64,000 nucleotides of DNA from Dendrobates tinctorius (GCF_039654945.1 NW_027361819.1:1302001-1366000), one strand, 5' to 3'; counted from the stretch's first letter, positions 8,074 to 56,189 are shown. Program-made: numbers and translations. Notes: a model not told the origin generated them from the letters alone.

Positions 8074-9639
8074 ATGATCGCATCTGCGGAGCTGAGGGAC
8101 GAGCTGAACTGCTCCATCTGCCTGAGCCTCTATACAGATCCCGTATCCCTGAGATGTGGACACAACTTCTGCCGCTCGTGTATTGTGAGTGTGCTGGATG
8201 CCCAGGAGGCGGCTGGAGGGTATTCCTGTCCTGACTGCAGAGCAGAATATCCGGAGCATCCGACCCTGGAGAAGAACCAAAAGCTGGGGAATATAGTGGA
8301 GCGTTTCTCATCTACTCAGCCTGATATGGAGGAGACCAGGACCTTCTGTGCTTACTGTACAAAGTCTCCAGTACCGGCTGTAAGGACATGTCTGCAGTGT
8401 GAGAATTCTTTTTGTGATGACCACCTGACTGTCCACAATAAGACAATGGATCATATATTAGTAGAACCCACCAGCTCTTTTGGCAACAAGAGATGCTTCC
8501 TCCACAACAAGGTTCTGGAGTATTACTGCCCGCAGGACTCTGCTTGTCTGTGTGTGTCTTGCTGTCTCTTTGGCATGCACCGAGGACACCAGGTGGAACA
8601 TCTGAATAAAGCTTCTGAGAAGAAGAAGAAGAAACTGAGAAAATATCTGGATGAACTAAACCCCCAAAAAGCAAACATTCATACAACAATCCAGAATCTG
8701 AAGAATCATAAGAGGAAGATCCAGGAGAAAGCCTCCGATAAGAGGAAGAACATCAGTAAGATATTTATAGACATTAAGAAGCATCTGGAAATCGCAGAAA
8801 AGAAATCGCTGAGCGAGGTCTCCAGGCAGGAGGAGAAGATTGTGTCCCAAATATCTCATCTGATCAAGCAGCTGGAAATACAGGAGGACGAGCTGTCCAG
8901 GAAGATGCGTCTCATGGAGGAGATGTGTTGTGTCACTGACCCAATAAGACTCTTACAAGAAAGTGACATTATATTATGTAGTCATGAAGGTGATGAGGAC
9001 ACAGGAGGAGATGGTGGAGAGGTCAGTTCTGAGGAGGATCTGGATGAGGTTCTGATCTCACTGACCTTACACCGATCTATGAGGGATATTGTCACCAATG
9101 TAACATCAGAGCTCGGGGTCCATGTCCCAGACATATTGCTGGATGTGGACACTGCTCATAGAAGGGTGAAGATATCAGAAGATCTGAAAACAGCAACAAG
9201 ATCAGAAAAGGAACAGGTGAGACCAGAATCACCAGGAAGATTTCTGACTTACTCCCAGGTATTAAGCAGATGTCTCCTGTCCTCAGGACGACATTACTGG
9301 GAGGTAATGTGGAACCAGTTAGGAAGATGTATCATCGGATTGTCCTATTCCAGTATAGAAAGGGAAGGAGATGAATCTGGAATTTTATTTAATGATAAAT
9401 CTTGGTGTTTGGATATGTATGATGCAGTACGTCAAGTACTTCATAAATCATTCAGCCTAATCCTCAAAGCACAACCGAAGTGCTCAACACTTGGAGTCTC
9501 CTTAGACTATGAGCCGGGCGTCTGTCCTTCTATGAGCTGTGTGACCCCGTCAGACACTTACACACCTTCACCGCCTCCTTCACTGAACCCCTACATGTCG
9601 TCTTCTATGTGGAGGATGGAGCCTCTGTTAGAGTATTAA
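8074..9639 (+). CDS. TRIM E3 ligase copy 1 (TRIM39/TRIM25-like, RING-2xBbox-CC-PRY/SPRY), frameshifted near the C-terminus
   Basis: C3HC4 RING, two B-boxes, coiled coil and the PRY/SPRY motifs GRHYWEV and LDYE. A 1-nt deletion near 9513 moves the last ~42 codons into another frame; the ancestral frame ends at TAA 9650. AATAAA at 9780. Confidence 0.9.
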   Translation: MIASAELRDELNCSICLSLYTDPVSLRCGHNFCRSCIVSVLDAQEAAGGYSCPDCRAEYPEHPTLEKNQKLGNIVERFSSTQPDMEETRTFCAYCTKSPVPAVRTCLQCENSFCDDHLTVHNKTMDHILVEPTSSFGNKRCFLHNKVLEYYCPQDSACLCVSCCLFGMHRGHQVEHLNKASEKKKKKLRKYLDELNPQKANIHTTIQNLKNHKRKIQEKASDKRKNISKIFIDIKKHLEIAEKKSLSEVSRQEEKIVSQISHLIKQLEIQEDELSRKMRLMEEMCCVTDPIRLLQESDIILCSHEGDEDTGGDGGEVSSEEDLDEVLISLTLHRSMRDIVTNVTSELGVHVPDILLDVDTAHRRVKISEDLKTATRSEKEQVRPESPGRFLTYSQVLSRCLLSSGRHYWEVMWNQLGRCIIGLSYSSIEREGDESGILFNDKSWCLDMYDAVRQVLHKSFSLILKAQPKCSTLGVSLDYEPGVCPSMSCVTPSDTYTPSPPPSLNPYMSSSMWRMEPLLEY

Positions 9640-10615
9640 ACGGAGTTTAACGAAGCCCACAGCAATCTGTTATATCACTTACTATATAGCAATGTGTTAG
9701 CAGGAGCTACCACTAATCTGGGGTTGCCCTTTAATTAATCTACAGATTGGTGATTTTTTTGGAATATCATGTAACACTCAATAAAGATCCCTAAAGATCC
9801 CGAAAGAGCTATGTAACAAAAGTCTAGCCCAAACGTCTGGGCTATGGGATCCAGGCATGCAGAGCAGGATCCCACAAGTAAGACCTTTGCACTAGATGAG
9901 CGCTACCACATACTTTACTAAGTTGTTACTGAACGGAGGGTTGTGGGAACCCGCTCTGCATGCTGGGACCCTACATCCTGGAAGTTCGGCCTTTTTTGAG
10001 GCATTTGGAACCATTCTGAGCATTTTTATAAATATATGATATTTAGAAAAATCACCAATCTGGGGCTGTTTACTATTGAATAAGAAGGGCAGCCAAAAAT
10101 TGGTAATTGGTAGTTTTTTAAGGTAAGGCCAGAATTTGTGGCCAAGATGTAGTTTTTGACTGATGAATTTTGGATTGCATGAATTGGCCATTTTTCATTT
10201 CTTCCCCTTTTTGCCAGAGTCATAACTTTTTTATAACTTTTTATATCAGGGCTTGTTCTTTCCAGGACGAGTTTTACTTTTAAATAACACCATTCATTAT
10301 AATATAGAATGAAGTGGAAAACAGAAAAATAATTCCAGGTCTGTTGAAATTGCAAAAAAAAGTGCAATTCCACAATTGTTTTTTTTATTTTTATTTATCA
10401 TGTCCGCTTAGTGGTAAAACTGACCTGGCGATCGGATTCTTCAGGTCAGTACAAGTGCTGAGATATTGAACATGTGTATTTCTTTTTGTATTTAAGCGGT
10501 GGGGGGAAAATCAGAAATGTGTAAAAAAAAAAAAATTGCTTTTGTTGCCATTTTCTGAGACGTGGAACGTTTTAATTTTTCGGGATCTGGGGCTGGGCTA
10601 GGATTTATTTTTTGG

Positions 10616-12856: not shown

Positions 12857-13390
12857 ACTAGATGAAGAGCCCGGCATTGCCCGGGTATAGTAACTAACTG
12901 CCGTCACGCTCTCTCCCTCCAAAGCCCCGCTCTCCACTCGCCATCCCGCATTCTCCCAAAGCAGCCCCGCTCTCCATCCACCGTCCCCGCTCTCTCCCTC
13001 TGCAGCCCCTGTCTCCACTGGCCGTCCTGGTCTCTCCCTCCGCAGTCCCTGCCTCCACTGGCCATCCTGCTCTCTCCCTCCGCAGCCCCTGTCTCCACTG
13101 GCTGTCCCACTCTCTCCCTCCGCAGCCCCACTCTCCACTGGCCGTCCCTCTCTCTCCCTCCGCAGCCCCGCTCTCCACTGGCCGTCCCGCTCTTTCCCTC
13201 CGCAGCCCCTGTCTCCACTGGCCATCCCGCTCACTCTCTCCGCAGCCCCTGACTCCATTGGCAGTCCCGCTCTCTCCCTCCGCAGCCCCGCTCTCCACTG
13301 GCCATCCTGCTCTCTCCCTCCACAGCCCTGCTCTCCACTGGCCGTCCCGCTCTTTCCCTCTGCAGCCCCTGACTCCACTGGCCTTCCCGA
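12857..13390. repeat. 40-bp minisatellite behind an ACTAG...CCCGG-n-CCCGGG element head (Helentron/DINE-like)
   Basis: About 12 copies of GCCGTCCCGCTCTCTCCCTCCGCAGCCCCGCTCTCCACTG at 12900-13385. Confidence 0.75.
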
Positions 13391-13815
13391 TCTCTTCAAG
13401 GCCCCCACATGTCACGTTTTTAGGATTTCCATAGAATTGCACAGGTGAGGGAATTCCTGATGCCATGATGATACGCCTTTCACCAGGGGAATGCAAAGGA
13501 AATCCTGAGAACATGACATATTGGGGGCTGTGAGGACTGGAGTGTGGGAAACCCTGATCTAGGGGAAAAAAAATATATATAGCAGCAATTCTGTAATTGT
13601 TTTTTTATTTTATCAGTGTTCACAAAGCAGGATAATTAACATGATAACGTTAGGATATGTGGTAAATGATAAATATTGTGGATATGATAAAGTTACAGAT
13701 GTGGTGATATCAATGTTATATTATTTTTATATCTAACTTATATTTAGAGTTGCTATAGATGCGGTATTATGAATTATACATTTTTATTTAAATTATTACT
13801 TTTGCATAATAAAAC

Positions 13816-18430: not shown

Positions 18431-19993
18431 ATGGCGTCTGCGGAGCTGAGGGAGGAGCTGAACTGCTCCATCTGCCTGAGCCTCTATACAGATCCCGTAT
18501 CCCTGAGATGTGGACACAACTTCTGCCGCTCGTGTATTGTGAGTGTGCTGGATGCCCAGGAGGCGGCTGGAGGGTATTCCTGTCCTGACTGCAGAGCAGA
18601 ATATCCGGAGCGTCCGGCCCTGGAGAAGAACCGGAAGCTGGAGAATATAGTGGAGCGTTTCTCATCTACTCAGCCTGATATGGAGAAGACCAGGATCTAC
18701 AATACTTACTGTGATTCTCCTACCCCGGCTGTAAGGACATGTTTGCAATGTGAGACCTCTGTGTGTGAGGAACATCTCGCAGACGATAACAAGTCGATGA
18801 ATCACAATCTACTTGAACCTACCCTGACATTTAAGGGTCAAAAATGCTCCACACACAATGAGATCCTGAAATACTACTGTCCTATAGACATCGTCTGTAT
18901 CTGCGAGTCCTGCTGGGTGGCTGGAGACCACAAGGGACATGACGTGGAACTACTGGACATGGCTTCAGAGACGACAAAGGAGAAACTGGAGAAATTTTTG
19001 GATGATCTAAACCCACAAAAAACACAAATCCAAACAAGAGTTAAGCATCTGCAGGAACATAAGAGGAAGATCCAGGAGAAAGCCTCCGATAAGAGGAAGA
19101 ACATCAGTAAGATATTTATGGACATTAAGGAGAAACTGGAAATAGCAGAAAAGAAAGCGCTGAGCGAGGTCTCGAGGCAGGAGGAGAAGATTGTGTCCCA
19201 GATATCTGATCTGATCAGGAAGCTGGAAATACAGAACAACGAGCTGTCCAGGAAGATGCGTCATATGGAGGAGATGTGTCGTGTCACCGACCCAGTAAGA
19301 CTCTTACAAGAAAGTGACATTACAGTAAGTAGTCATGGAGGAGATGAGGACACAGGAGGAGATGGTGGAGAGGTCGGTACTGAGGAGGATCTGGATGAGG
19401 TTCTGATCTCACTGATCTTATACCGATCTATGAGGGATATTGTTACCAATGTAACATTAGAGCTCGGGATCCATGTCCCAGACATATTGCTGAATGTGGA
19501 CACTGCTCATAGAAGGGTTAAGATATCAGAAGATTTGAAAATAGCAACAGAATCAGAAGAACAGGAGAAACCAGAATCACCAGGAAGATTTGTGACATTT
19601 CCCCAGGTGTTAAGTAGACCTGGCCTCTCTTCAGGGCGACATTACTGGGAGGTAGTGTGGGACCAGATAGGAATATGTGGCATCGGATTGTCCTATCCCA
19701 GTATAGAAAGGGATGGAGGACAGTCTGGTATTGTATATAATGATAAATCTTGGTCTTTGTACATGTATGATGGTCAATATGGAGTATATCACAACTCCCT
19801 AGGATTAATTCTCAATGTAAAGCCAACATGTCCAAAACTTGGGGTCTTTTTAGACTATGAGGCCGGGCGTCTGTCCGTCTATGAGCTGTGTGACCCCATC
19901 AGACACTTACACACCTTCACTGCCTCCTTTAGTGAACCCCTTCATGTTGTCTTCCATTTGTATGATAAGGCCTCTGTCAAAATAAGAAGCTGA
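18431..19993 (+). CDS. TRIM E3 ligase copy 2 (intact ORF, degenerate B-box1)
   Basis: 520-aa ORF with RING, B-boxes, coiled coil and complete PRY/SPRY (LDYEAGRLS...EPLH). Confidence 0.95.
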   Translation: MASAELREELNCSICLSLYTDPVSLRCGHNFCRSCIVSVLDAQEAAGGYSCPDCRAEYPERPALEKNRKLENIVERFSSTQPDMEKTRIYNTYCDSPTPAVRTCLQCETSVCEEHLADDNKSMNHNLLEPTLTFKGQKCSTHNEILKYYCPIDIVCICESCWVAGDHKGHDVELLDMASETTKEKLEKFLDDLNPQKTQIQTRVKHLQEHKRKIQEKASDKRKNISKIFMDIKEKLEIAEKKALSEVSRQEEKIVSQISDLIRKLEIQNNELSRKMRHMEEMCRVTDPVRLLQESDITVSSHGGDEDTGGDGGEVGTEEDLDEVLISLILYRSMRDIVTNVTLELGIHVPDILLNVDTAHRRVKISEDLKIATESEEQEKPESPGRFVTFPQVLSRPGLSSGRHYWEVVWDQIGICGIGLSYPSIERDGGQSGIVYNDKSWSLYMYDGQYGVYHNSLGLILNVKPTCPKLGVFLDYEAGRLSVYELCDPIRHLHTFTASFSEPLHVVFHLYDKASVKIRS

Positions 19994-25548: not shown

Positions 25549-27084
25549 ATGGCGTCTTCTGACTTGAATTGCTCCATCTGCCTGAGCCTCTATACAGATC
25601 CCGTATCCCTGAGATGTGGACACAACTTCTGCTGTTCCTGTATTGTGAGTGTGCTGGATGCCCAGGAGGCGGCTGGAGGGTATTCCTGTCCTGTCTGCAG
25701 AGTAGAATATCGGGTGCGTCCAGCCCCGGAAAAGAAACGGAAGCTGAGGAATAGAGTGGAGCGTTTCTCATCTTCTCAGCCTGATATGGAGGAGACCAGG
25801 ACCTTCTGTGCTTACTGTACAAAGTCTTCTGTCCCGGCTGTGAAATCCTGTCTGCAGTGTGAGAATACTTTCTGTAGCGACCACCTGACAGCCCACAACA
25901 AGACAATGGATCACATATTAATAGATCCCACAAGATCTTTTGACAACAAAAAATGTTCCCTCCACAAGAAGGTTCTGGAGTATTACTGCCTGCAGGACGC
26001 GGCTTGTCTGTGTGTGTCTTGCTGTTTAATTGGAGAACACCAAGGACACCTGGTGGAACTTCTAGATGTGGCTTCTGAGAAGAAAAGAAAGAAAATGAAG
26101 GAATATCCGAACAAACTAAATGCAGAAAAAGAAGATATTCAGAAAGAAGTCCAGTATCTGCAGGATGATAAGAGGAAGATCCAGGAGAAAGCCTCCAATA
26201 AGAGGAAGAACATCAGTAAGATATTTATGGACATTAAGAAGCAAGTGGAAATGGCAGAAAAGAAAGTGCTGAGTGAGGTCTCCAGGCAGGAGGAGAAGAT
26301 TGTGTCCCAGATATCTGATCTGATCCAGAAGCTGAAAATAGAGGAGGATGAGCTGTCCAGGAAGATGTGTCACGTGGAGGAGATGTGTCGTGTCACCGAC
26401 CCAATAAGACTCTTACAAGAAAGTGACATCACAGTATGTAGTCTTGGAGATGGTGGAGAGGTCAGTTCTGAGGAGGATCTGGATGAGGTTCTGATCTCAC
26501 TGACCTTACACCGGTCTATGAGGGATATTGTCACCAATGTAACATCAGAGCTCGGGGTCCATGTCCCCGATATATTGCTGGATGTGGACACTGCTCATGA
26601 ATGTGTGAAGGTATCAGAAGATCTGAAAACAGCAATGGGTTCAGATAACAAACAGGAGAGGTCAGAATCACCAGGGAGATTTGTGGATTGCTCCCAGGTG
26701 TTAAGCAGATGTGGCCTCTCCTCAGGACGACATTACTGGGAGGTAGAGTGGGACCAGAAAGGAGAATGTAGTGTTGGATTGTCCTATTCCAATATAGAAA
26801 GGAAAGGAGATAAGTCTGGTGTTGGATATAATGATAAATCTTGGAGTTTGGATATGTATAATGAAGAATATAATGTATGGCACAACTCCAATATATTACC
26901 TCTCAGTGTAAAGCCAACATGTCCAACACTTGGGGTCTTCTTAGACTATGAGGCCGGGCGTCTGTCCTTCTATGAGCTGTGTGACCCCATCAGACACTTA
27001 CACACCTTCACCGCCTCCTTCACTGAACCCCTACATGTTGTCTTCAGTCTGGAGGTTGGAGCCTCTGTTACAATAAGAAGCTGA
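25549..27084 (+). CDS. TRIM E3 ligase copy 3 (intact)
   Basis: 511-aa ORF with the full domain set. In-frame deletions at the N-terminus (4 codons) and in the acidic linker (7 codons) relative to the paralogues. Confidence 0.95.
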   Translation: MASSDLNCSICLSLYTDPVSLRCGHNFCCSCIVSVLDAQEAAGGYSCPVCRVEYRVRPAPEKKRKLRNRVERFSSSQPDMEETRTFCAYCTKSSVPAVKSCLQCENTFCSDHLTAHNKTMDHILIDPTRSFDNKKCSLHKKVLEYYCLQDAACLCVSCCLIGEHQGHLVELLDVASEKKRKKMKEYPNKLNAEKEDIQKEVQYLQDDKRKIQEKASNKRKNISKIFMDIKKQVEMAEKKVLSEVSRQEEKIVSQISDLIQKLKIEEDELSRKMCHVEEMCRVTDPIRLLQESDITVCSLGDGGEVSSEEDLDEVLISLTLHRSMRDIVTNVTSELGVHVPDILLDVDTAHECVKVSEDLKTAMGSDNKQERSESPGRFVDCSQVLSRCGLSSGRHYWEVEWDQKGECSVGLSYSNIERKGDKSGVGYNDKSWSLDMYNEEYNVWHNSNILPLSVKPTCPTLGVFLDYEAGRLSFYELCDPIRHLHTFTASFTEPLHVVFSLEVGASVTIRS

Positions 27085-40143: not shown

Positions 40144-41000
40144 GCGCTGGGGGTGGTGGCCCACCCACTTCCATGCAGTCACAACCGGCAGGAAAGACGG
40201 TGTTTTGCGGCCTATGCTGGAGATGGTGTGCGGCGCCACCAGAGGGTGGCCGCACCCAATCTCCAGCACAGGCCTCAAGCCACGGACTTTCCTGCCAGCT
40301 GTGACTGCACGGAGGTGGGTGGGCAGGCAGCGATGGGATCCGGCGCGTGTAGTCAGGTGGTGGGTCCTGGCGGGGGTCCGGCGGCGGCATCCCTCTCATT
40401 ACTCCCCCCTCATTACACCCTCTCATTACACCCCCTCATTACACCCTGTCATTATACCTCCTTCATTACACCCCTCTCGTTATACCCCCTCGTTACACCC
40501 CTTTCACAGCCTCGTGATCCCAGCAGCTATCGTGATCGCAGCGGCGTTCGGGATCACAGCAGTGGCCTTGATCCGAGTGGCAGCTGGGATCCCATCGGCG
40601 GTCGGGATCGCAGTGGCATTCGGGATCGCAACTGCGTTCGGGATTGCAACTGCATCCTGGATCCGAGCGGCATCACTTGGGTGTACCAAAATGGCGGTTG
40701 GCATACTTCCGATGCGGCGCGGTGGATTGTGGGATTCGGGGACATCCAGACGGAGGTGGATGACAGACAATTTAAGGCAATTATATATATGGAAGTTTTC
40801 TGCTTTCTTCCCTGTGCTCAAATTGGTGGTGGATTCTCTTGATGACCAGGTGGAGTCACTATAACTCTTAATCCTACACCAGATCCTCATGGATGATTGT
40901 TAGGTGCTTTCATCCAAATTGTGAATCAGCAGTGAGCACAACTATGGAGCTGTAGGGGTTAATTATTCTCACAGTCCTCCACCCTTCCTGTGGAAAGAAA

Positions 41001-41017
41001 CTTTCACTTTCAGTTCC
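41001..41017 (-). promoter_or_regulatory. Candidate ISRE/IRF-binding element upstream of TRIM copy 4
   Basis: CTTTCACTTTCAGTTCC, which is GGAACTGAAAGTGAAAG on the minus strand (GAAANNGAAA consensus), 18-34 nt before the ATG. It could instead be a splice acceptor. Confidence 0.45.
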
Positions 41018-41034
41018 TGCTCTCTCCCACTACA

Positions 41035-42603
41035 ATGGCGTCTGCGGAGCTGAGGGACGAGCTGAACTGCTCCATCTGCCTGAGCCTCTATACAGATCCC
41101 GTATCCCTGAGATGTGGACACAACTTCTGCCGCTCGTGTATTGTGAGTGTGCTGGATGCCCAGGAGGCGGCTGGAGGGTATTCCTGTCCTGACTGCAGAG
41201 CAGAATATCCGGAGCGTCCGGCCCTGGAGAAGAACCGGAAGCTGAGGAACATAGTGGAGCATTTCTCATCTACTCAGCCTGATATGGAGGAGACCAGGAT
41301 CTTCTGTACTTACTGTACAAAGTCTCCTGTCCCGGCAGTGAAGTCCTGTGCTCATTGTGAGGCGTCTTTTTGTGAAGAGCACCTAAGCAGACACAGTAAG
41401 TCACCAGAACATATGTTAGTTGACCCCACTGATTCCCTGGAGGAAAGAAAATGCTCCACACACAAGGAGGTGCTGAAATACTACTGTCCTATAGACGCCG
41501 CCTGTATCTGTGTGTCCTGCTGTTTGGCCGGAGACCACAAGGGACATGACGTGGAGCTACTGGATGAGGCCTCTGAGAAGAAGAAGGAGAAATTTAGGGA
41601 ATATCTGCATGAACTAAATCCACGAAAAGCAGAAATTCAGACAAGAGTCCAGAATCTGCAGGATCATAAAGGAAAGATCCAGGAGAAAGCCTCCGATAAG
41701 AGGAAGAACATCAGTAAGATATTTATGGACATTAAGAAGCAACTGGAAATGGCAGAAAAGAAAGCGCTGAGCGAGGTCTCCAGGCAGGAGGAGAAGATTG
41801 TGTCCCAGATATCTGATCTGATCAAGAAGCTGGAAATACAGGAGGACGAGCTGTCCAGGAAGATGCGTCACGTGGAGGAGATGTGTCGTGTCACCGACCC
41901 AATAACACTCTTACAAGAAAGTGACATTACAGTATGTAGTCATGGAGGTGATGAGGACAGAGGGGGAGATGATGGAGAGGTCAGTTCTGAGGAGGATCTG
42001 GATGAGGTTCTGATCTCACTGACCTTACTCCGATCTATGAGGGATATTGTCACCACTGTAACATCAGAGCTCAGGGTCCATGTCCCAGACATATTGCTGG
42101 ATGTGGACACTGCTCATAGAAGGGTGAAGGTATCAGAAGATCTGAAAACAGCAACAATATCAGAAGAAAAACAGGAAATGCCAGAATCACCAGGGAGATT
42201 TGTGGATTACTCCCAGGTGTTAAGCAGATGTGGCCTCTCCTCGGGACGACATTACTGGGAGGTAGAGTGGGACCAGATAGGAGACTGTGCCATCGGATTC
42301 TCCTATCCCAGTATAGAAAGGGAAGGACGGCAGTCTTGTATTGGACTTAATGATAAATCTTGGAGTTTGGATATGTATGATGGAGAATATAAAGTATATC
42401 ACAACACAGATGTATTAACCCTCAGTGTAAAACCAACATGTCTGACACTTGGGGTCTTCTTAGACTATGAGGCCGGGCGTCTGTCCTTCTATGAGCTGTG
42501 TGACCCCATCAGACACTTACACACCTTCACCGCCTCCTTCACTGAACCCCTACATGTCGTCTTCTGTGTGGATTATGGGGCCTCTGTTACAATAAGAAGC
42601 TGA
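41035..42603 (+). CDS. TRIM E3 ligase copy 4 (intact, 522 aa from ATG 41035)
   Basis: ACAATGGCG start context shared with the paralogues; full RING-Bbox-CC-PRY/SPRY. Confidence 0.95.
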   Translation: MASAELRDELNCSICLSLYTDPVSLRCGHNFCRSCIVSVLDAQEAAGGYSCPDCRAEYPERPALEKNRKLRNIVEHFSSTQPDMEETRIFCTYCTKSPVPAVKSCAHCEASFCEEHLSRHSKSPEHMLVDPTDSLEERKCSTHKEVLKYYCPIDAACICVSCCLAGDHKGHDVELLDEASEKKKEKFREYLHELNPRKAEIQTRVQNLQDHKGKIQEKASDKRKNISKIFMDIKKQLEMAEKKALSEVSRQEEKIVSQISDLIKKLEIQEDELSRKMRHVEEMCRVTDPITLLQESDITVCSHGGDEDRGGDDGEVSSEEDLDEVLISLTLLRSMRDIVTTVTSELRVHVPDILLDVDTAHRRVKVSEDLKTATISEEKQEMPESPGRFVDYSQVLSRCGLSSGRHYWEVEWDQIGDCAIGFSYPSIEREGRQSCIGLNDKSWSLDMYDGEYKVYHNTDVLTLSVKPTCLTLGVFLDYEAGRLSFYELCDPIRHLHTFTASFTEPLHVVFCVDYGASVTIRS

Positions 42604-43502
42604 GGCCGATGTCGTCCTCGTCACATTATAATGACATTATTCCTTGTCACATGGACACATCAGTATATAGTGAGTTATCAGCGGGACCCTCTAATAATAC
42701 AATGTATATGGCGGAGTCATGGGGGGATTGTTCCTATTGGATTGGTTTGTCTACCTTGGAGATCAGATGCAGAATCAATAATTGAGGCGAACTGAAATAA
42801 TGGGTAAATTGTGCTAAAACTGATAATTGCTTGCTGATCATTAACCCCTTCCTGAAATCCTGTGTACATGCACGAAACAATTATTTTGCAGAGCTGGGTG
42901 CTAGCTGTATATCATAGCTGATACCTCCTGTAAAAGTCATGGTCGGTGATAAGCCTATTGTGGCCATTTGACCCCCTCTGGTGATTCTGTCAATGGCGAC
43001 AGTAGTATCTGTTTATTTTAGTGAGGGGACACCCTCTTCGTCCCTATCAGCACCCCATGATTTGGATTATGCGGTGCCAATGGCAGACATGATGACCCCA
43101 GGCTGAGTAATGGGGTCACCCAGCTATAGTGGCCTGTAAGATATTGCCATGAGCAGGACCTGACACACCACCTGTCAGTGTAAGACTGAGAGGCCTAATA
43201 CGCTGTCAGGCTCACCCACCAAACAGCCGACATGTGTTTCACCATTGCTTCGTCAGGGGTCTGGTTGGTGAAACGTGCGTCATGTGTCTGCTGACTGAGC
43301 CTGAACATGTCCTCATTATCATGTGCACTATTTGCTCTTTATTGTATGGGACCCTAGTACTGTTGGCACCTTTATTCTTATTTCTACACCTCATTTTTAG
43401 ATTTGGATTCATTAAGTGTTTACATTTGATTGCATATTAGTTTATATACCTTATTCATAATTTTGGAACATTTCCATCGTTGGGGTAATTCTTTTTTTAT
43501 TG

Positions 43503-46353: not shown

Positions 46354-46357
46354 TTAA

Positions 46358-46872: not shown

Positions 46873-47119
46873 TTAAAGGGGTTATCCAGGCTTGGGATAA
46901 AAGTCTGCAGTCAATCGATGTGACTGCAGACTAGGTGCAGTGCGCATGCTGCCATGAGTCCCATCCGGTGCGATCAGGCGGTCAGACGTTTCCTATTTGC
47001 ATGTGCCGACTAGTTACATTTGGCGTCTTTCAATAAAAAAAATTGAGAGAAGCCAAAAGAGTTTTCAACACAGCTTCAGGCTGTATACCTGCGCAGACTC
47101 GCATCACCGATACTGGTGC

Positions 47120-48080
47120 CATTATTACTGTATATGGGGGCTACTCACGGGCCATTATTACAGTACATGGGGGACTCGGGGGACATTACTGTACATGGGG
47201 GACTCAGGGGGACATTATTACTGTACATGGGGGACTCGGGGGACATTATTACTGTTCATGGGGGACTCGGGGGACATTATTACTGTACATGGGGGACTCG
47301 GGGGACATTATTACTGTACATGGACTCGGGGGACATTATTATTGTACATGGGGGACTCGGGGGACATTATTACTGTATATGGGGGACTCGGGGGACATTA
47401 TTACTGTACATGGGGGAATCGGGGGACATTATTACTGTATATGGGGGACTCGGGGGACATTATTACTGTACATGGGGGACTCGGGGACATTATTACTGTA
47501 TATGGGGGACTCGGGGGACATTACTGTACATGGGGACTTGGGGGACATTATTACTGTACATGGGGGACTCGGGGGACATTATTATTGTACATGTTTGACT
47601 CGAGGGACATTACTGTACATGGGGAGACTCGGGGGACATTAGTACAGTACATGGGGGGACTTGGGGGACATTATTACTGTACATGAGGGGACTCATGGGC
47701 CATTATTACTATACATGGGGAGACTCATGGGAAATTATTACTGTACATGGGGGACTTATGGGCCATTATTACTGTACATGGGGGGACTCAGGGGTCATTA
47801 TTACTGTACATGGGGGACTCATGGGCCATTATTACTGTACATGGGGGACTCATTTGCCATTATTACTGTACATAGGGGGGCTCATGGGCCATTATTACTG
47901 TACATGGGGAGACTCATGGGAAATTATTACTGTACATGGGGGACTTATGAGCCATTATTACTGTACGGGGGGACTCAGGGGCCATTATTACTGTACATAG
48001 GGGGACTCATGGGCCATTATTACTTTTCATGGGGGGGCTCATGGGCCATTATTACTGTACATGGAGACTTGGGGGACACT
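47120..48080. repeat. ~30-bp minisatellite
   Basis: Unit GGGGGACATTATTACTGTACATGGGGGACTC. Confidence 0.95.
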
Positions 48081-51000
48081 ATTAAATGTTAATATAAGTA
48101 GAACTCCTCACTTTCTGTTACGGAGAGCCGTGTACTGATTATTAAATGTTAGGTGTACGCTTAATTATTATTGTTTCCAGGAGCACCAGTAGTGCCTTTA
48201 CCAGGTGGCAGACGGTACGATCATCCCGGGCCCCTCATTCGGATGTGATCACCCAGAGCTACCACCACTCCTAACTGTATCGGCATATAGTTAAGCTCTG
48301 CGGTGGTGTAGGGCGACATGATCTCCCTGCTCTACTGCTCTCCATTTTGTAGACCGCATGTCGCTTGACGCCTGCAGTTTACAGAACGATAGGGTGACAC
48401 GATGGGCCCCGGCACACACAGGACTTTAGCGTCCAGACACGCTGATGTCATTGCACAGAACCAAGACTCTGACATCTTGTGCGTGCACCATCGTGATGAC
48501 ATTGCAGTGGTCCACTTACACTTTTCCGGTGGACTCGTCAGGATCCAGGATTAGGTGGAGCATGGGGGAACCTCAAACTTTGTAAGGACTATTGTAGGGG
48601 GCCTTCATATTCCGTGGGAGCCATTATACATCATGGGAGCTAATGTGTGGACCATTATACAGTGTGAAGACTACTGTGGGGCCATTATACCCTTTGGGAG
48701 CTAATGAGAGGGCCATTATACAGCTTGTGGGCTAGTATGGGGACTACTGTGAGAGGCCCTCATACAGTGTGGGAGCCAATATAAAGTGTGGGGACTACTG
48801 TGGGGCCGTTATACAATGTGAGAGCATATATGAGCGCCATTCTACAGTTTAGCAGCCATCAAACAGTGTGGAGACTACTGTAGAGGCTAATATTAAGTGT
48901 GAGGGACATTATATAGTATTGAGGCTACCGTGGGAGCCATTATAGTGTGAGGGACATTATATAGAGTCGGGGTTATTGTGGGGGCCATTATACACTGTGA
49001 GGACTACTATGGGGGTCAGTATATTGTGTTTTGAGGGAGCAGTGGCCCCGTCATATTGTGTATAGGAGAGCTGTGGACTTAGCCTGCTTTGTATAGGGCA
49101 GCTGTGGGCCTTTCCTACTGTGCATAAAGATTTATTTTCAGTAATACCGTGATAATCGGCTGAGGTTCCCCTATACCCACAATTAGTGTGTGTCACCATA
49201 GTTGTAATCAGGGTAACCTAGTTAGGGGCCCACTCAGATGTTTTGCCCCCCCCCCCCCCCCCCCGAGCTAAACCCCTAGCTATGCCTCCGCTCAGAAGAA
49301 AAGGAGCACAATACTATAATGCAGATTTTACTGGTTTACGGATGCCATGACCCACTGGCAGAGCCCCTGAGGTGCCAGAACAGCCGACCCCCCAATAAAT
49401 GATCCCATTTTACAAACTACTCCTGTCAATGAATTGATCTAAGGGTGGAAGGATCATATTGACATCACAGGTGTGTCACAGACTTTTATAACATTGGGCA
49501 TGGGTATTTTCCAGAAACAAGCAGCAATGGATGTTGCTGAGTGAAAATTGCAAACTGCTGTTGTAGTGACCAGTACGCTGTAGTGACCAGTACGTTGTAG
49601 TCATCAGTACATTATGCCCAGCCCGTGCTTCTGTAGACACGCACCCGTAAGTTAGACGGGCTCTCATCACTACAGAAATGCCAACCGTGGACGCTATATG
49701 TGATTTAGACACACTGGGGCTCAGAAGGGAGGGGTGCATTTGCATTTAGGAGTGGAGAATTTGCTGAATTTCTTTTGGCGGGTGAGGAGCTATTTTGCTT
49801 TTTCAGAACCATTGTACCACCAGTAACTTGGAAGCCCCCTATATTTCCGTTAATAGGTGGCAGATCTGAGTAGGGACTTGCTCTTTTTGTGGACTGAAGC
49901 TTTTATTGGGAACATTTTACATAACGTTTGGGATCACAGTTATCCGGTGCTCTGCGCTGAGCACTTACATTGGGGTTTCCATGTATGGACCGGTAGAAGC
50001 GCTAAGCATGCGCGAAACAGCCGTAGTCCGTCAGGCTCTCTCATCTGCATAGCTCCCCTGCTACCTGCACTCTGCACTCTAATATGGTTTGATGTCACGT
50101 TTCACTACGGAATAAAATCGCACCTCAAGAAGGATCTGGGTGAGTGCTCCAGTTCTTCCAATTTCTTATGATTTACCTTGATGTCATCTATGTGAGTGCA
50201 CCACCCCACAGAGATCCTAAGGAGGCGCATTGAGGTGTGAACCAGTGAACATTGCTTGATTCCAGCAACTGGTGCTTAATTCTCTCTTTTTTTCAAATAA
50301 GAAGAATTGGTTTTATTTATTTTTTACGCTGTTCCTCGCGTGGGATAAGTGATTAGATGACATTATTCTTCGGGTCAGTACGATTACAGCGATATCAGAT
50401 TTATATCGTTTTTTATGTTTTGGCGCTTTTACACAGTAAAAACTATTTTAGAGAAAAAATAAGTTTTTGCATTGCTTTATTCTGAGAGCTATAACTTTTT
50501 TATTTTTCAGCTAACAGCTGTGTGGCTGCTTGTTTTTTGTGGACGAGATGATGTTTTCAGGTATGCCATTTCTATTTCCATTCGACTTTTTTGTTGCGTT
50601 TTATTGCACTTTTTGTTTGGCAGGATGAAGATAAAGCATCATTTTTTGACACTTTTTTTGCTGAAAGTGTTAACCGGTGGAACAGTTTTATAGGTCGGGT
50701 CGTTACGGACGTGGCAATACGAATTTTTTTTTTCCGTATATATATATGTGTATTGATTGGTAGAATTTTTTTTCATTTTTTTTGTTAATTAGTGATTTTT
50801 TAAAAAAATATTTTTAAAATTATTTTTACTTGGTTCCTCTATAGGGCTTTTTTTTTTTTACTCTGATCACTGGTAAAACACACTGCAATGCATTATACCT
50901 GTCAATGCTGCACAGACAGAAGACACTTGGACCATGCTTCTAGCATGCCCTAACAGGTTTGCCTGGAGGTCGTGGCAACAATCGGGCCCTGGTGATGACA

Positions 51001-52863: not shown

Positions 52864-53810
52864 TGTAACAAAAAGACATGAGACCGCTATAAAACTAGTG
52901 CAGGATTTTGCATTGATGAGGAAAGACTGTAATTTGCTGGCCAGCCAAAATTAAGCGGAACCAAAGTGAGCTGGAAGATTTGCAGGGGGAACGACATTGT
53001 GTGCTGGACCGGATCAGGTGATGCTCAGTAAGGACTTCACTGATATGCGCGCCCAACCATGAGGAGATTTGGCACCAGGGAAGAGAGCGAGGCAGATGTG
53101 CTCTACAGACACCTCTGAGACCAATGTGACAGACTTCAGCAGGGAGTCTGTGCTACCCAGGTGTCGGTCACCACCTGGCAAGGTCTCGATCCCCCAGAAG
53201 ATATCTTTGAGAACGGCTTACACTGGTCAGAGCCAGAATCTGTGCCCTGCGCTGGTCAAGCCTCTGAGGCCCGACTACGCCTGCCAAGAGTTGAGGCCCG
53301 ATCCTCTCTGCCCGAGCCTGAGAGACTTCCACTGACGGTTAAGCCAAGAAGAGCCATGCAACGACTGGGATAGGAGAGGCACACGTGCGAGAGAGGAGGG
53401 ACAGTGCAAGTGAGCAAGGCCATCACTTCCAGCTATCACCTACGGTACTAGGGTCAGCTGGGACTAGGATTACAGGATGGAAGGGGGCTGCTTGGGGCGA
53501 GCTTTAATACACTACGTCAGGAAGAGACCTGCTGCTTAGTGGGAAAACCTGGTGACTCCCGCTAGGGCCAGAGCTTCAAGTGACAACTCAAGTGGTGACT
53601 CCAAAGACTGGGCGCACCACCTTTGTGAAACGCACACTAGCGTTAAGTAGTGAGCGACTTTCTTGTTTATAGTAAACCTGTTGTGATTCCCTATACTGTT
53701 AAATTGTGTTTCTGCTAACACTAAATATTTAAAAGTTACTGTTGTGTATCAACCCCTGGCTGTTTCCACCTCATGATCTCTGATCGTTGCATCTAGACAC
53801 CTGCATTACA
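52864..53810 (+). mobile_element. Solo LTR, family C, inserted in a MITE ~270 bp upstream of TRIM copy 5
   Basis: TGTAA...TTACA termini and an imperfect TSD GATA/GAAA. The flanks rejoin as TGTTTTGGA..CACTCCTGGTTTTGGC, seen uninterrupted on the minus strand at ~57150-57180. Confidence 0.7.
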
Positions 53811-54083
53811 GAAACACTCCTGGTTTTGGCACAGCAATACTGATAAAATGCCGATCAAAAATACTGATGTGTGAATGAGGCCTAATATGATCAGGTGGAG
53901 TTACTACAACTCCTAATCCCACACCAGATCCTCATAAATGATCAGTAAGAGCTTACTTCATAAGTGTAGATCAGCAGTGAACACAACCATGGGGCTGTAG
54001 GGGTTAATGATTTTGCACAGACTCTCCGCCTTCTTACTGGGAGGAAACTTTTCCAATTTCAGTTCCCGCTCTTTCCCACTACA

Positions 54084-55511
54084 ATGGCGTCTGCGGAGCT
54101 GAGGGACGAGCTGAACTGCTCCATCTGCCTGAGCCTCTATACAGATCCCGTATCCCTGAGATGTGGACACAACTTCTGCCGCTCGTGTATTGTGAGTGTG
54201 CTGGATGCCCAGGAGGCGGCTGGAGGGTATTCCTGTCCTGACTGCAGAGCAGAATATCCGGAGCGTCCGGCCCCGGAGAAGAACCGAAAGCTGAGGAACA
54301 TAGTGGAGCGTTTCTCATCTACTCAGCCTGATATGGAGGAGACCAGGATCTTCTGTGCTTACTGTACAAAGTCTCCTGTACCGGTAGTGAAATCCTGTCT
54401 GCAGTGTGAGAATACTTTCTGTGACGACCATCTGACAGCCCACAACAAGACATTGGATCATATATTAATAGATCCCACAAGATGTTTTGGGAACAAAAAA
54501 TGTTCCCACCACAAGAAGGTTCTGGAGTATTACTGCCCGCAGGACGCGGCTTGTCTATGTGTGTCTTGTTGTTTGGTTGGTGACCACCAAGGATACCAGG
54601 TGGAACTTCTAGATGAGGCTTCTGAGAAGAAGAAAAAGGAACTGAGGAAATATCTGGATGAACTAAACCCACAAAAAGCAGAAATTCAGACAAGAGTCCA
54701 GAATCTGCAAGATCATAAGAGGAAGATCCAGGAGAAAGCCTCCGATAAGAGGAAGAACATCAGTAAGATATTTATGGACATTAAGAAGCAACTGGAAATG
54801 GCAGAAAAGAAAGCGCTGAGCGAGGTCTCCAGGCAGGAGGAGAAGATTGTGTCCCAGATATCTAATCTGATCAAGAAGCTGGAAATACAGGAGGACGAGC
54901 TGTCCAGGAAGATGCGTCACGTGGAGGAGATGTGTCGTGTCACCGACCCAATAAAACTCTTACATGAAAGTGACATTACAGTATGTAGTCATGGAGGTGA
55001 TGAGGACACAGGGGGAGATGGTGGAGAGCTCGGTACTGAGGAGGATCTGGATGAGGTTCTGATCTCACTTACCTTACACCGATCTATGAGGGATATTGTC
55101 ACCAATGTAACATCAGAGCTCGGGGTCCATGTCCCCGATATATTGCTGGATGTGGACACTGCTCATGAATGTATGAAGATATCAGGAGATCTGAAAATGG
55201 CAACAAAAGGAGAACAGGAGAAACTAAAATCTCCAGGAAGATTTGTAAATTACTCCCAGGTGTTAAGCAGATGTATCTTCTCCTCAGGGCAACATTACTG
55301 GGAGGTACAATGGGACCAGATAGGAGTCTGTGCTATTGGATTGTCCTATCCCAGTATAGATAGGCAAGGAGATAAGTCTAGTATTGGATATAATGATAAA
55401 TCTTGGTGTTTGGATATGTATAATGGAGGATATAAAGTATGGCACAACTCAGATAAACTAATCCTCAGTGTAAAGCCAACATGTCCAACACTTGGCATCT
55501 TCTGTCTATGA
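54084..55511 (+). CDS. TRIM E3 ligase copy 5, truncated in SPRY (possible pseudogene; relic frame runs to 55644)
   Basis: TTC-TTAGAC-TAT has become TTC-TGTC-TAT (net -2 nt) at ~55503, giving TGA at 55509-55511. The downstream YEAGRLSFYELCDPIRH...TIRS* is intact out of frame. Confidence 0.88.
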   Translation: MASAELRDELNCSICLSLYTDPVSLRCGHNFCRSCIVSVLDAQEAAGGYSCPDCRAEYPERPAPEKNRKLRNIVERFSSTQPDMEETRIFCAYCTKSPVPVVKSCLQCENTFCDDHLTAHNKTLDHILIDPTRCFGNKKCSHHKKVLEYYCPQDAACLCVSCCLVGDHQGYQVELLDEASEKKKKELRKYLDELNPQKAEIQTRVQNLQDHKRKIQEKASDKRKNISKIFMDIKKQLEMAEKKALSEVSRQEEKIVSQISNLIKKLEIQEDELSRKMRHVEEMCRVTDPIKLLHESDITVCSHGGDEDTGGDGGELGTEEDLDEVLISLTLHRSMRDIVTNVTSELGVHVPDILLDVDTAHECMKISGDLKMATKGEQEKLKSPGRFVNYSQVLSRCIFSSGQHYWEVQWDQIGVCAIGLSYPSIDRQGDKSSIGYNDKSWCLDMYNGGYKVWHNSDKLILSVKPTCPTLGIFCL

Positions 55512-56189
55512 GGCCGGGCGTCTGTCCTTTTATGAGCTGTGTGACCCCATCAGACACTTACACACCTTCACCGCCTCCTTCACTGAACCCCTACATGTTA
55601 TCATTTATCTGAATGATGGGGCCTCTGTTACAATAAGAAGCTGAGGCCGATGTCGTCCTCGTCACGTTATAATGACATTATTCCTTGTCACATGGACACA
55701 TCTGTATATAGTGAGTTATCAGCAGGACCCTCTAATAATACAATGTGTATGGCGGAGTCATGGGGGGATTGTTCCTATTGTTTTTTCCTCTTCCCTGTAG
55801 AAGAGGAAGAATCAATGATTGAGGAGAATGTAAATATTAATGGGTGAATTGTCCTGAGACTGATAATTGTTATTCAGTAAAGGGTTAATCCTATCTGATA
55901 AAGTGCTGGTATATACCTGGTATATGTCAGCACTATCTGACTCCCGGGACCCCCAACGATCCTGAGAATAAAGGGGCTGCAGCAGGGCCGGACAGGGACT
56001 AAAATTCAGCCCTGGCATTTGAAGTTACACAGGCCACTAGTCACATGGTGACTATATAATATCTTTGTACACTTGTAGGTTACAAGAAGTGAAAGGAGAT
56101 TAACACGACTATATAACATGTAGTCAGAGCTGTGCCCAGTATTTCAGCTCAGTCCTATTTATTGCTTTTAGGTACAGTACTCCTCCCAA

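What the first reader, a model, noticed from the sequence alone, without database searches (positions are those of the whole stretch)
8074..55644. Five-gene TRIM array with a constant RING module and hypervariable PRY/SPRY loops
Seen: 157 nt of RING-coding DNA (8101-8257) is identical in copies 1, 2, 4 and 5, including synonymous sites, and the YELCDPIRHLHTFTASF-coding DNA is near-identical in all copies. Short SPRY segments between them differ radically: LGRCII/IGICGI/KGECSV/IGDCAI/IGVCAI; DAVRQVLHKSFSL/DGQYGVYHNSLGL/NEEYNVWHNSNIL/DGEYKVYHNTDVL/NGGYKVWHNSDKL; YVED/HLYD/SLEV/CVDY/YLND. Established: SPRY variable loops set target specificity in TRIM5, TRIM21 and fish finTRIMs. Inference: an amphibian innate-immune receptor repertoire with gene-converted framework and diversifying recognition loops.
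Basis: partly seen in the sequence, partly recalled or inferred. Interest (0 to 1): 0.75.

Follow-up and report, generated by a model that had tools for sequence, protein, structure and literature searches.

The report
Mosaic TRIM25-like gene array, poison frog
Five tandem, single-exon TRIM25-like ubiquitin-ligase genes of the dyeing poison frog (three intact, two frameshifted) keep most of their length alike by copying between copies, retain two ancient B-box types, and diversify a few target-binding positions, as fish finTRIMs and primate TRIM5 do.

Summary
Five RING/B-box/coiled-coil/PRY-SPRY genes lie on the + strand. The 157-nt RING block is letter-identical in copies 1, 2, 4 and 5, and every quoted peptide is present.

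Three corrections:
- Copies 1 and 5 carry 1-nt and 2-nt deletions in the SPRY, so only three copies are intact.
- The most diverged segment is the B-box (dS about 1, dN/dS about 0.2), not the SPRY loops.
- The RING block is also identical in a Phyllobates copy, so within-genome copying may not be the whole cause.

Segment trees disagree. The B-box keeps two lineages older than the toad/poison-frog split. RING, coiled coil and PRY/SPRY group by frog family. This indicates concerted evolution that spares the B-box.

A self-written codon site test finds about 13% of PRY/SPRY codons at omega 4-5 (LRT 88-93). Controls and null simulations stay at or below 12. A pairwise estimate is weaker (1.45, CI 0.86-2.58).

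An immune role is inferred by analogy only.

This scan had already noted the same family in neighbouring windows of this genome. One earlier follow-up reached a similar reading. I rate it a new, apparently undescribed member of a known kind.

The parts
8074..9650 (+). Copy 1: TRIM25-like gene, frameshifted. A 1-nt deletion lies after 9512. The ancestral frame resumes at 9513 and ends at 9650; the ORF as assembled ends at 9639. It is the oldest and most diverged copy in flanks and SPRY.
18431..19993 (+). Copy 2: intact 520-aa gene with a type-B B-box lineage. Its B-box1-like motif reads N and D where the other copies have a Cys and a His.
25549..27084 (+). Copy 3: intact 511-aa gene with a type-A B-box. 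Its RING differs at 10 of the 157 block positions. It has 12-nt and 21-nt in-frame deletions.
41035..42603 (+). Copy 4: intact 522-aa gene (ATG at 41035; the listed ORF starts further upstream at a GTG). It has a type-B B-box nearest to the Phyllobates and Bufo gargarizans genes. Used as the numbering reference.
54084..55644 (+). Copy 5: frameshifted. A 2-nt deletion lies after 55503, and the ORF stops at 55511. The ancestral frame resumes at 55504 and ends at 55644. In the B-box2 motif DHxGH, the second His is Tyr in this copy.
41059..41215 (+). The 157-nt RING block, identical at 8101-8257, 18455-18611, 41059-41215 and 54108-54264, and also identical in the Phyllobates terribilis locus L002.
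41320..41670 (+). B-box1/B-box2 segment of copy 4 (aa 96-212). It is not homogenised, holds two ancient lineages, has dS 0.8-1.5 between types and is under purifying selection.
41671..42099 (+). Coiled coil plus linker of copy 4 (aa 213-355), homogenised: dS 0.02-0.12 among the nine D. tinctorius copies compared, with dN about equal to dS.
42100..42600 (+). PRY/SPRY (B30.2) domain of copy 4 (aa 356-522). Positively selected positions fall in 42121-42123 (aa 363), 42157-42213 (aa 375-393), 42283-42291 (aa 417-419), 42328-42348 (aa 432-438), 42370-42420 (aa 446-462) and 42559-42579 (aa 509-515).
40905..41034 (+). About 130 nt before the ATG, conserved in all copies. The last 60 nt are also recognisable in a Bufo bufo gene. 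An IRF/ISRE-like core GAAAGTGAAA lies on the - strand at 41002-41011.
42604..42934 (+). 3' flank shared by copies 2-5 (85-87% over 225-340 nt; K 0.07-0.18). It is not shared by copy 1.

Best explanation
The window is a 64-kb stretch (about 1.302-1.366 Mb of contig JAYMGB010000173.1) of a tandem array spanning more than 400 kb in Dendrobates tinctorius. The array consists of TRIM25-like class-IV TRIM E3 ubiquitin-ligase genes, each with its coding sequence in a single exon. Relatives with the same architecture occur in many copies in dendrobatid, aromobatid, bufonid, hylid and leptodactylid frogs.

Shown here: each gene is an evolutionary mosaic.
- RING, coiled coil/linker and the beta-core of the PRY/SPRY are kept alike among paralogues. 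The cause is sequence exchange between copies (ectopic gene conversion or unequal crossing-over) on top of purifying selection.
- The B-box1/B-box2 segment is spared. It carries two lineages that predate the Bufonidae/Dendrobatidae split and evolve under purifying selection.
- About 13% of PRY/SPRY codons evolve with dN/dS well above 1. They lie in the beta2-beta3 loop, the start of beta5, the beta5-beta6 loop, strands beta7/beta8 and the beta12-beta13 turn.
- Copies 1 and 5 are probably pseudogenes.

Inferred, not shown: the proteins dimerise through the coiled coil, ubiquitinate through the conserved RING, and use the diversified B30.2 surface to bind varied, probably pathogen-derived, targets. 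That would make them a germline repertoire of sensors or restriction factors, like fish finTRIMs and primate TRIM5.
For: - Domains: Pfam hits. The PRY/SPRY model has pLDDT 90.7 and 13 strands. Its best structural match is human TRIM25 PRYSPRY, TM 0.90. The best sequence match in the PDB is TRIM25.
- Family size and host.
- Mosaic divergence: dS is about 0.05 in RING and coiled coil, about 1 in the B-box (dN/dS 0.2), and 0.1-0.45 in the SPRY.
- DNA trees of 14 genes. The B-box splits into two types with 100/100 support, each containing a Bufo gene, and rejects Bufo monophyly (p-AU 0.00025). RING+coiled coil and PRY/SPRY unite the two Bufo genes (100/100) and reject the B-box type (p 4e-5 and 6e-13).
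- The 82-protein set gives the same result: RING+coiled coil rejects the B-box clade, p-AU 0.0005.
- Copy 1 has a RING dS of 0.03-0.05 to copies 2, 4 and 5, but a B-box dS of 0.47 to its nearest copy, a 5' flank K of about 0.6 and an unrelated 3' flank.
- Site test: M2a against M1a gives LRT 88 (14 genes) and 93 (12 intact genes), omega2 4.4-5.3, p2 about 0.13. Three sub-segments with their own trees give LRT 38, 24 and 28.
- Controls give LRT 0 for the B-box, 0.9 for the RING and 11.8 for the coiled coil. Four null simulations give 1.3-6.6.
- The 26 sites that are hypervariable in Bufo proteins alone have dN 0.50 against dS 0.35 in dendrobatid DNA. The rest of the domain has dN/dS 0.54.
Against: - The site test is my own implementation. 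Branch-length proportions are fixed from M0, only 12-14 sequences were used, and the null runs look slightly liberal.
- Residual recombination inside about 55-codon segments could still inflate the test.
- The recombination-insensitive pairwise estimate at independently defined sites is 1.45 with CI 0.86-2.58, so it does not exclude 1.
- A Sawyer-type run test on the five copies alone is not globally significant.
- The 157-nt RING block is identical in a Phyllobates gene. Dendrobates-to-Bufo four-fold divergence in RING and coiled coil (0.11-0.17) is only about half that of the nearest B-box pairs (0.23-0.38). Extra constraint on silent sites, or misjudged B-box orthology, therefore cannot be excluded.
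- No expression, induction, ligase or binding evidence was obtained. The read layout was dominated by cross-matching paralogues.
- The frameshifts could be assembly or polishing errors.
Confidence: 0.75

Rival explanations
1. There is no exchange between copies. The pattern reflects only different selective constraint along the gene: RING and coiled coil strongly constrained, B-box and loops free, in genes that duplicated once.
For: RING and coiled-coil proteins are highly conserved across eight frog species. The 157-nt block is identical even in Phyllobates. The Sawyer-type run test is not globally significant.
Against: Constraint cannot change tree topology. B-box types are shared across frog families, while RING/coiled coil and SPRY group by family, and each data set rejects the other's grouping. 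The B-box is itself under purifying selection (dN/dS 0.2; M2a LRT 0), yet has dS about 1. Silent-site divergence in the RING (0.02-0.05) is well below that of the adjoining flanks (K 0.15-0.6).
Confidence: 0.06
2. The variable SPRY positions reflect relaxed constraint plus old, unconverted sequence patches, not adaptive diversification. The site-model signal is an artefact of recombination.
For: Local dS at the hypervariable codons is raised (0.35 against 0.16), as expected for older patches. The pairwise dN/dS confidence interval includes 1. The coiled-coil control also gave a modest LRT of 11.8. Null simulations reached 6.6. Two of the five copies are decaying.
Against: LRT is 88-93 overall and 24-38 in each of three segments given their own trees, far above the controls and null runs. 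Estimated omega2 is 4-5, not about 1. The same positions are hypervariable independently in Bufo and in dendrobatids. They fall on the loops and strands that build the canonical B30.2 binding site. Leaving out the two frameshifted copies strengthens the signal.
Confidence: 0.13
3. The family is real and diversifying but is not antiviral or immune. It might, for example, control endogenous mobile elements, act in the germline or in reproduction, or act on host proteins.
For: No expression or induction data were obtained. A canonical ISRE-like core is present before only 3 of the 13 genes examined. The genome is very rich in repeats, and the array is embedded in satellites and transposon remains.
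Against: The closest characterised relatives all act in antiviral defence: TRIM25, and finTRIMs such as FTR83 (PMC5445110; title and abstract as listed). Positive selection focused on B30.2 contact positions is typical of host-pathogen conflict (PMC2657112). This is analogy, not a test.
Confidence: 0.2
4. The array or its frameshifts are assembly artefacts, such as collapsed or chimeric paralogues or polishing errors.
For: Both frameshifts lie within 10 nt of each other, at the 5' edge of the most conserved SPRY block. Reads from paralogues would mis-map there. The read layout could neither confirm nor contradict them.
Against: Each copy has its own unrelated intergenic sequence and its own B-box and SPRY variants. 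A copy-5-specific 268-nt stretch occurs without any difference in a DNA run, although that run is possibly from the same sample. Copies 2, 3 and 4 match gene models of the public assembly exactly. Copy 5 also has a His-to-Tyr change in its B-box2 DHxGH motif, which fits real decay.
Confidence: 0.1

Closest known systems
Fish finTRIM (ftr) genes
   Same: Both are large lineage-specific tandem expansions of RING/B-box/coiled-coil/B30.2 genes related to TRIM25 and TRIM16. Both have a conserved N-terminal part and B30.2 positions under positive selection at the variable loops, and both show recombination among copies (PMC2657112; here).
   Different: finTRIMs were reported as teleost-specific with no Xenopus orthologue (PMC2657112). 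They are multi-exon, with the B30.2 on its own exon (PMC3137616). The frog genes have a single coding exon. They also show an ancient B-box dimorphism, which was not mentioned in the passages of those papers that I read. Orthology was not tested.
TRIM25 (human and mouse)
   Same: TRIM25 is the best sequence and structure match: E 9e-59 over RING to coiled coil, and PRYSPRY TM 0.90 at 33-34% identity. NCBI names the frog genes TRIM25-like.
   Different: TRIM25 is a single gene of about 630 aa with a longer linker (the 630-residue chain 4cfg). The frog genes are about 520 aa and present in many copies with a single coding exon. They are not the orthologue.
Primate TRIM5/6/22/34 cluster
   Same: Both are tandem paralogues with patches of positive selection in the B30.2 variable regions that set target specificity, and with discordant evolution of neighbouring genes (PMC2151084 title and abstract; PMC2657112).
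   Different: That cluster has far fewer copies and multi-exon genes. No capsid-binding evidence exists for the frog genes, and the relationship is only at family level.
Concerted evolution with spared segments in other immune multigene families (e.g. zebrafish NLR-B30.2 genes)
   Same: Gene conversion is treated at length in the zebrafish NLR paper (PMC4852459; 22 occurrences of the term).
   Different: That paper was not opened. The domain architecture differs. Here the spared module is the B-box, which is under purifying rather than diversifying selection.

Membership tests
Class-IV TRIM (RBCC-B30.2) E3 ligases | N-terminal C3HC4 RING finger | tested here: met
   zf-C3HC4_4, zf-RING_UBOX and zf-C3HC4 hits at aa 8-55 in all five copies
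Class-IV TRIM (RBCC-B30.2) E3 ligases | B-box zinc finger(s) after the RING | tested here: met
   zf-B_box hit at aa 132-175 in all copies. A B-box1-like Cys/His pattern lies upstream, read by eye. Copy 2 reads N and D where the others have a Cys and a His; copy 5 has Tyr for the second His of DHxGH.
Class-IV TRIM (RBCC-B30.2) E3 ligases | Coiled coil | tested here: met
   PF25600 TRIM_CC hit at about aa 195-311. It is above the cut-off in copies 2-5 and just below in copy 1.
Class-IV TRIM (RBCC-B30.2) E3 ligases | C-terminal PRY/SPRY beta-sandwich | tested here: met
   PRY and SPRY hits. The model has pLDDT 90.7 and 13 strands. TM 0.90 to TRIM25 PRYSPRY. The domain is truncated by frameshift in copies 1 and 5.
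Class-IV TRIM (RBCC-B30.2) E3 ligases | E3 ubiquitin-ligase activity | not testable with these tools
   Needs an in-vitro ubiquitination assay.
TRIM25 orthologue | One gene per genome, about 630 aa, multi-exon | tested here: not met
   Many paralogues per genome, about 520 aa, uninterrupted ORFs. The exon structure of TRIM25 is from general knowledge.
finTRIM-like diversified TRIM repertoire | Large lineage-specific tandem expansion related to TRIM25/TRIM16 | tested here: met
   Five copies in 64 kb. More copies lie at 1.39, 1.66, 1.71 and 1.72 Mb of the same contig. Many paralogues occur per species in eight frog species.
finTRIM-like diversified TRIM repertoire | Positive selection concentrated in B30.2 variable loops | tested here: met
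   M2a against M1a LRT 88-93. Sites fall in the beta2-3 loop, beta5, the beta5-6 loop, beta7/8 and the beta12-13 turn. Caveats: own implementation, and the pairwise confidence interval includes 1.
finTRIM-like diversified TRIM repertoire | Membership of the teleost ftr clade (orthology) | not tested
   No ftr sequences were fetched. PMC2657112 reports no Xenopus orthologue.
finTRIM-like diversified TRIM repertoire | Induction by virus or interferon | not testable with these tools
   Only a lead: GAAAGTGAAA lies 33 nt before the ATG of copy 4, and at the same place in L001 and L002. It is degenerate before the other ten genes.
Concerted evolution by ectopic gene conversion | Segment trees that disagree significantly | tested here: met
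   AU tests
Concerted evolution by ectopic gene conversion | Paralogues within a lineage more alike than same-type genes across lineages in the converted segments | tested here: met
   RING and coiled-coil four-fold divergence is 0.06 within D. tinctorius and 0.11-0.17 to Bufo. The two Bufo genes, of different B-box types, group together.
Concerted evolution by ectopic gene conversion | Significant shared tracts (GENECONV-type test) | tested here: inconclusive
   Pairwise permutation p is 0.002-0.04 for seven of the ten pairs. Global p is 0.08 or more with only five sequences.

The most novel reading that the evidence does not exclude
The genes may be built from three kinds of exchangeable cassette:
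- a constant effector part (RING, coiled coil);
- one of a few B-box types kept apart for more than the age of the toad/poison-frog split, because they set which proteins can assemble together;
- a diversifying B30.2 surface.

Ongoing exchange between copies would then shuffle B-box type against binding surface, giving a combinatorial germline repertoire.

A related possibility is that the letter-perfect RING block, identical across paralogues and across genera, is kept by selection on the DNA itself, for instance as a homology anchor for that exchange.
Probability: 0.12. Interest if true: 0.7.

Novelty: new member of a known kind. Interest (0 to 1): 0.45.

Why it matters
Amphibians are declining under ranavirus and chytrid infection, and their innate immune gene repertoires are poorly described. 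I found no paper on this frog TRIM25-like expansion in the library I could search. [quoted passage not shown]

The array offers a tetrapod counterpart with a single coding exon, which makes copies easy to clone and swap. It yields a concrete list of candidate target-contact residues. The segment that escapes homogenisation, the B-box, is the assembly module rather than the binding module, and that points to a testable question about which TRIM proteins can co-assemble.

The general pattern (tandem TRIM expansion, exchange between copies, selected B30.2 loops) is well known. A specialist would therefore be interested but not surprised.

Tried and rejected
- RNA structure as a cause of the silent-site identity of the RING block: rejected. 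Folding gives z -0.2 for the 157 nt and -0.4 for 301 nt including the 5' leader.
- Strong silent-site constraint across frog families: suggested by NG86 dS. Four-fold sites reduce the contrast to about two-fold. It is left open, not claimed.
- Protein-level test of Bufo monophyly on B-box data: not significant (p-AU 0.13). The DNA test was significant.
- Sawyer-type run test on the five copies: low power, no global significance.
- Reads: all runs are short contigs with heavy cross-matching from paralogues.
  - They neither confirm nor contradict the copy-5 deletion and give no usable expression evidence.
  - One run of unknown type has very high depth over the conserved gene parts only.
- ISRE as evidence of interferon control: one exact GAAAGTGAAA in the window, at -33 of copy 4, with 0.14 expected by chance. 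It is present before only 3 of 13 genes. Kept as a lead only.
Placement is by secondary-structure element only.
- Literature searches for a description of the anuran expansion found none.
- One protein look-up failed (P0017).
- No complex prediction or large protein search was run; neither was needed.

Full report
**What is there**

The window has no N. It carries five long ORFs on the + strand, at 8074, 18431, 25549, 41035 and 54084. Each has RING, B-box, TRIM coiled-coil, PRY and SPRY Pfam hits. tblastn with copy 4 finds these five and nothing else.

The genes are 7-15 kb apart. Homology between copies covers the coding sequence, about 130-240 nt upstream and about 225-340 nt downstream. The rest of the spacers is unrelated and full of satellites and a Tc1-type transposase remnant.

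The proteins of copies 2, 3 and 4 are identical to gene models on contig JAYMGB010000173.1 of the Dendrobates tinctorius assembly GCA_039654945.1. Copy 4 lies at 1,343,035-1,344,603 there, so the window is about 1.302-1.366 Mb. Further paralogues lie at 1.39, 1.66, 1.71 and 1.72 Mb. The array therefore spans more than 400 kb.

NCBI names the relatives 'E3 ubiquitin/ISG15 ligase TRIM25-like'. Many paralogues per species appear in Dendrobates, Phyllobates, Ranitomeya, Anomaloglossus, Bufo, Dendropsophus, Hyla and Leptodactylus.

**Check of the observation**

The 157 nt at 8101-8257 recur exactly in copies 2, 4 and 5. Copy 3 differs at 10 positions.

Copy 1 lacks one base after 9512 and copy 5 lacks two bases after 55503. 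Their last 45 or so residues can only be read by shifting frame. As assembled, both lose strands beta10-beta13 of the SPRY. In the B-box2 motif DHxGH, copy 5 also has Tyr in place of the second His.

The two deletions lie within 10 nt of each other at the 5' edge of the most conserved SPRY block. This could reflect real decay, a fragile spot, or mis-polishing. The read layout could not decide.

**Mosaic divergence**

Sliding-window and per-domain estimates give the following for the window copies:

| Segment | dS | Note |
|---|---|---|
| RING | 0.02-0.05 | copy 3: 0.11-0.14 |
| Coiled coil and linker | 0.04-0.12 | dN about equal to dS |
| B-box1/B-box2 (aa 96-212) | 0.8-1.5 between types | dN/dS about 0.2 |
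| PRY/SPRY | 0.1-0.36 | short patches of low identity |

The flanks give a rough neutral yardstick. K is 0.07-0.18 for the 3' flank and 0.21-0.44 for the 5' flank among copies 2-5. For copy 1, K is about 0.6 at the 5' flank and the 3' flank is unrelated.

Copy 1 is therefore an old paralogue. Its B-box dS to its nearest copy is 0.47. Yet its RING is almost identical to the others (dS 0.03-0.05). This is hard to explain without copying between genes.

**Test of exchange between copies**

I fetched nine more genes with their DNA: four from D. tinctorius, one from Phyllobates, two from Ranitomeya, one from Bufo gargarizans and one from Bufo bufo. I built separate maximum-likelihood trees for each segment.

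- The B-box tree has two deep types with 100/100 support.
  - Type B holds copies 2 and 4, the Phyllobates gene, one Ranitomeya gene, one further D. tinctorius gene and the B. gargarizans gene.
  - Type A holds copies 1, 3 and 5, the other frog genes and the B. bufo gene.
  - B-box data reject a tree that unites the two toad genes (p-AU 0.00025).
- RING+coiled coil and PRY/SPRY each unite the two toad genes (100/100).
  - Each rejects the type-B grouping (p 4e-5 and 6e-13).
- An 82-protein set from eight species gives the same picture.
  - The B-box split has support 100 and contains both frog families on each side.
  - RING+coiled coil separates the families perfectly and rejects the B-box clade (p-AU 0.0005).

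So the B-box lineages are older than the toad/poison-frog split. The rest of the gene has been homogenised independently in each lineage. This is concerted evolution that spares the B-box.

GC3 is somewhat higher in the homogenised parts (0.62 and 0.57 against 0.48 and 0.42). This fits GC-biased conversion but is weak evidence. A Sawyer-type run test on the five window copies alone lacks power.

**An open point**

The 157-nt block is also identical in the Phyllobates gene. It differs at only 2-3 positions in the two Ranitomeya genes and at 7-10 in Bufo. Within-genome conversion cannot lower divergence between species.

At four-fold sites, Dendrobates-Bufo divergence is 0.11-0.17 in RING, coiled coil and SPRY. 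It is 0.23-0.38 for the nearest B-box pairs. Two explanations remain:
- The same-type B-boxes of the two families are not true orthologues. In that case neutral divergence is about 0.15 and nothing more is needed.
- Silent sites in the homogenised parts are under some extra constraint.

RNA structure is not the cause (z -0.2 and -0.4). I leave this open.

**Selection in the PRY/SPRY**

An AlphaFold model of copy 4 residues 338-522 (pLDDT 90.7) has the 13 strands of a PRY/SPRY sandwich. Its best match is human TRIM25 PRYSPRY, TM 0.90 at 34% identity.

No codeml or HyPhy was available, so I wrote an M0/M1a/M2a codon site test (F3x4 frequencies, branch-length proportions fixed from M0).

| Data set | LRT |
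|---|---|
| PRY/SPRY, 14 genes (omega2 4.4 for 13.7% of codons) | 88 |
| PRY/SPRY, 12 intact genes (omega2 5.3) | 93 |
| aa 356-412, own tree | 38 |
| aa 413-468, own tree | 24 |
| aa 469-522, own tree | 28 |
| B-box (control) | 0 |
| RING (control) | 0.9 |
| Coiled coil/linker (control) | 11.8 |
| Four M1a simulations on the same tree | 1.3-6.6 |

The test is a little liberal but far below the observed values.

The sites with high posterior probability are aa 363, 375, 381, 391-393, 417, 419, 432, 433, 435, 438, 453, 455, 460, 462 and 511-515. They lie just before beta1, at the end of beta2, in the beta2-beta3 loop, at the start of beta5, in the beta5-beta6 loop, at alternate residues of beta7 and beta8, and in the beta12-beta13 turn.

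Solved TRIM complexes place the binding site on top of the 6-stranded sheet, shaped by the surrounding loops. Strands 7 and 8 lie at the edge of that sheet (PMC12355088). That the frog sites form one surface is inferred, because I could not read the model coordinates.

As a check free of tree assumptions, I defined 26 hypervariable positions from Bufo proteins alone and measured them in dendrobatid DNA. There dN is 0.50 and dS 0.35, a ratio of 1.45 (bootstrap CI 0.86-2.58). The rest of the domain gives 0.54. The direction agrees, but the interval includes 1. The raised local dS shows that these patches are also older than their surroundings.

**Function**

Nothing here tests function. The architecture, the TRIM25-like fold and the finTRIM/TRIM5-like evolutionary pattern make a RING-dependent E3 ligase with a diversified target-binding surface the most likely reading. 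Pathogen recognition is the most likely driver.

The last 130 nt or so before the ATG are conserved in all copies. The last 60 nt are recognisable even in a B. bufo gene. They contain GAAAGTGAAA on the minus strand, 33 nt before the ATG of copy 4, and at the same place in one other D. tinctorius gene and the Phyllobates gene. The motif is degenerate before the other ten genes. That this resembles an interferon-response core is from memory and is only a lead.

**Comparison with known systems and novelty**

The closest known system in behaviour is the teleost finTRIM family. [quoted passage not shown] The closest in sequence and fold is TRIM25. The frog genes are not its orthologue: they are many, about 520 aa long, and have a single coding exon.

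Searches of the held literature found no description of this anuran expansion.

Within this scan, the same family was already noted on neighbouring and other pieces of this genome. One follow-up reached a similar conclusion about a gene pair.

- the frameshifts in copies 1 and 5;
- the ancient B-box dimorphism shared across frog families, with formal tests;
- a controlled site test with a list of candidate contact residues;
- the cross-genus identity of the RING block.

I class the finding as a new member of a known kind.

The one read-laying run used 2,301 letters. No N was present.

Noticed in passing
window 9512/9513 and 55503/55504: The two independent frameshifting deletions, in copies 1 and 5, lie within 10 alignment columns of each other. 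Both sit at the 5' edge of the most conserved SPRY block (LDYEAGRLSFYELCDPIRH). This could be a fragile spot, the end of a conversion tract, or mis-polishing by reads from paralogues.
   Followed up: partly
L002:10025-10181 (Phyllobates terribilis) against window 41059-41215: The 157-nt RING block is letter-identical in a gene of another genus. It differs at 2-3 positions in the two Ranitomeya genes and at 7-10 in Bufo. Conversion within one genome cannot explain identity between species.
   Followed up: partly
window 18431-19993 (copy 2), aa 88-120; window 54084-55644 (copy 5), aa about 170: In its B-box1-like motif, copy 2 reads N and D where the other copies have a Cys and a His. In the B-box2 motif DHxGH, copy 5 has Tyr in place of the second His.
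   Followed up: no
window 41002-41011 (- strand); same place in L001 and L002: GAAAGTGAAA, an IRF/ISRE-like core by memory, lies 33 nt before the ATG inside a leader that is conserved even in a Bufo bufo gene. It is the only exact match in the window (0.14 expected by chance) and is degenerate before 10 of the 13 genes examined.
   Followed up: partly
L003:11129-11266 (Bufo gargarizans): A 138-nt insertion sits in the part coding for the beta2-beta3 loop. The 522-aa gene model evidently leaves it out as an intron. The ATG of this gene is preceded by TTGCAG, a splice-acceptor-like site, so toad genes may have a 5' UTR intron.
   Followed up: no
window 53700-56000, run X15: A run of unknown type from the same organism shows summed contig depth of 10^4-10^5 over the conserved TRIM parts and the 3' flank. 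Depth starts within about 75 nt before the ATG. It is zero or near zero over copy-5-specific stretches and the upstream spacer. This would fit strong transcription of the family but not of copy 5. The run type is not on record.
   Followed up: no
window 32961-33461 (+): An ORF with a Tc1/Tc3-type transposase helix-turn-helix domain (PF01498, E 4e-24), a remnant of a Tc1/mariner element between copies 3 and 4.
   Followed up: yes
window 30991-31854; 34103-36405; 37581-38223; 47120-48084; 57810-64000; 12900-13395; 38-802: The spacers are full of satellite arrays, which produce many of the long spurious ORFs in the ORF list.
- 31-nt units at 31 kb and 47 kb.
- 21/131-nt units over 2.3 kb at 34-36 kb.
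- Six 107-nt units at 98% identity at 37.6 kb.
- A C-rich 30-nt array of more than 6 kb that runs off the window end.
   Followed up: partly
window 46354-46876: A stretch of about 520 nt matches its own reverse complement at 84.5% (a large palindrome-like inverted repeat). It lies a little downstream of the hammerhead-like unit that other readers flagged at 45257-45739.
   Followed up: no
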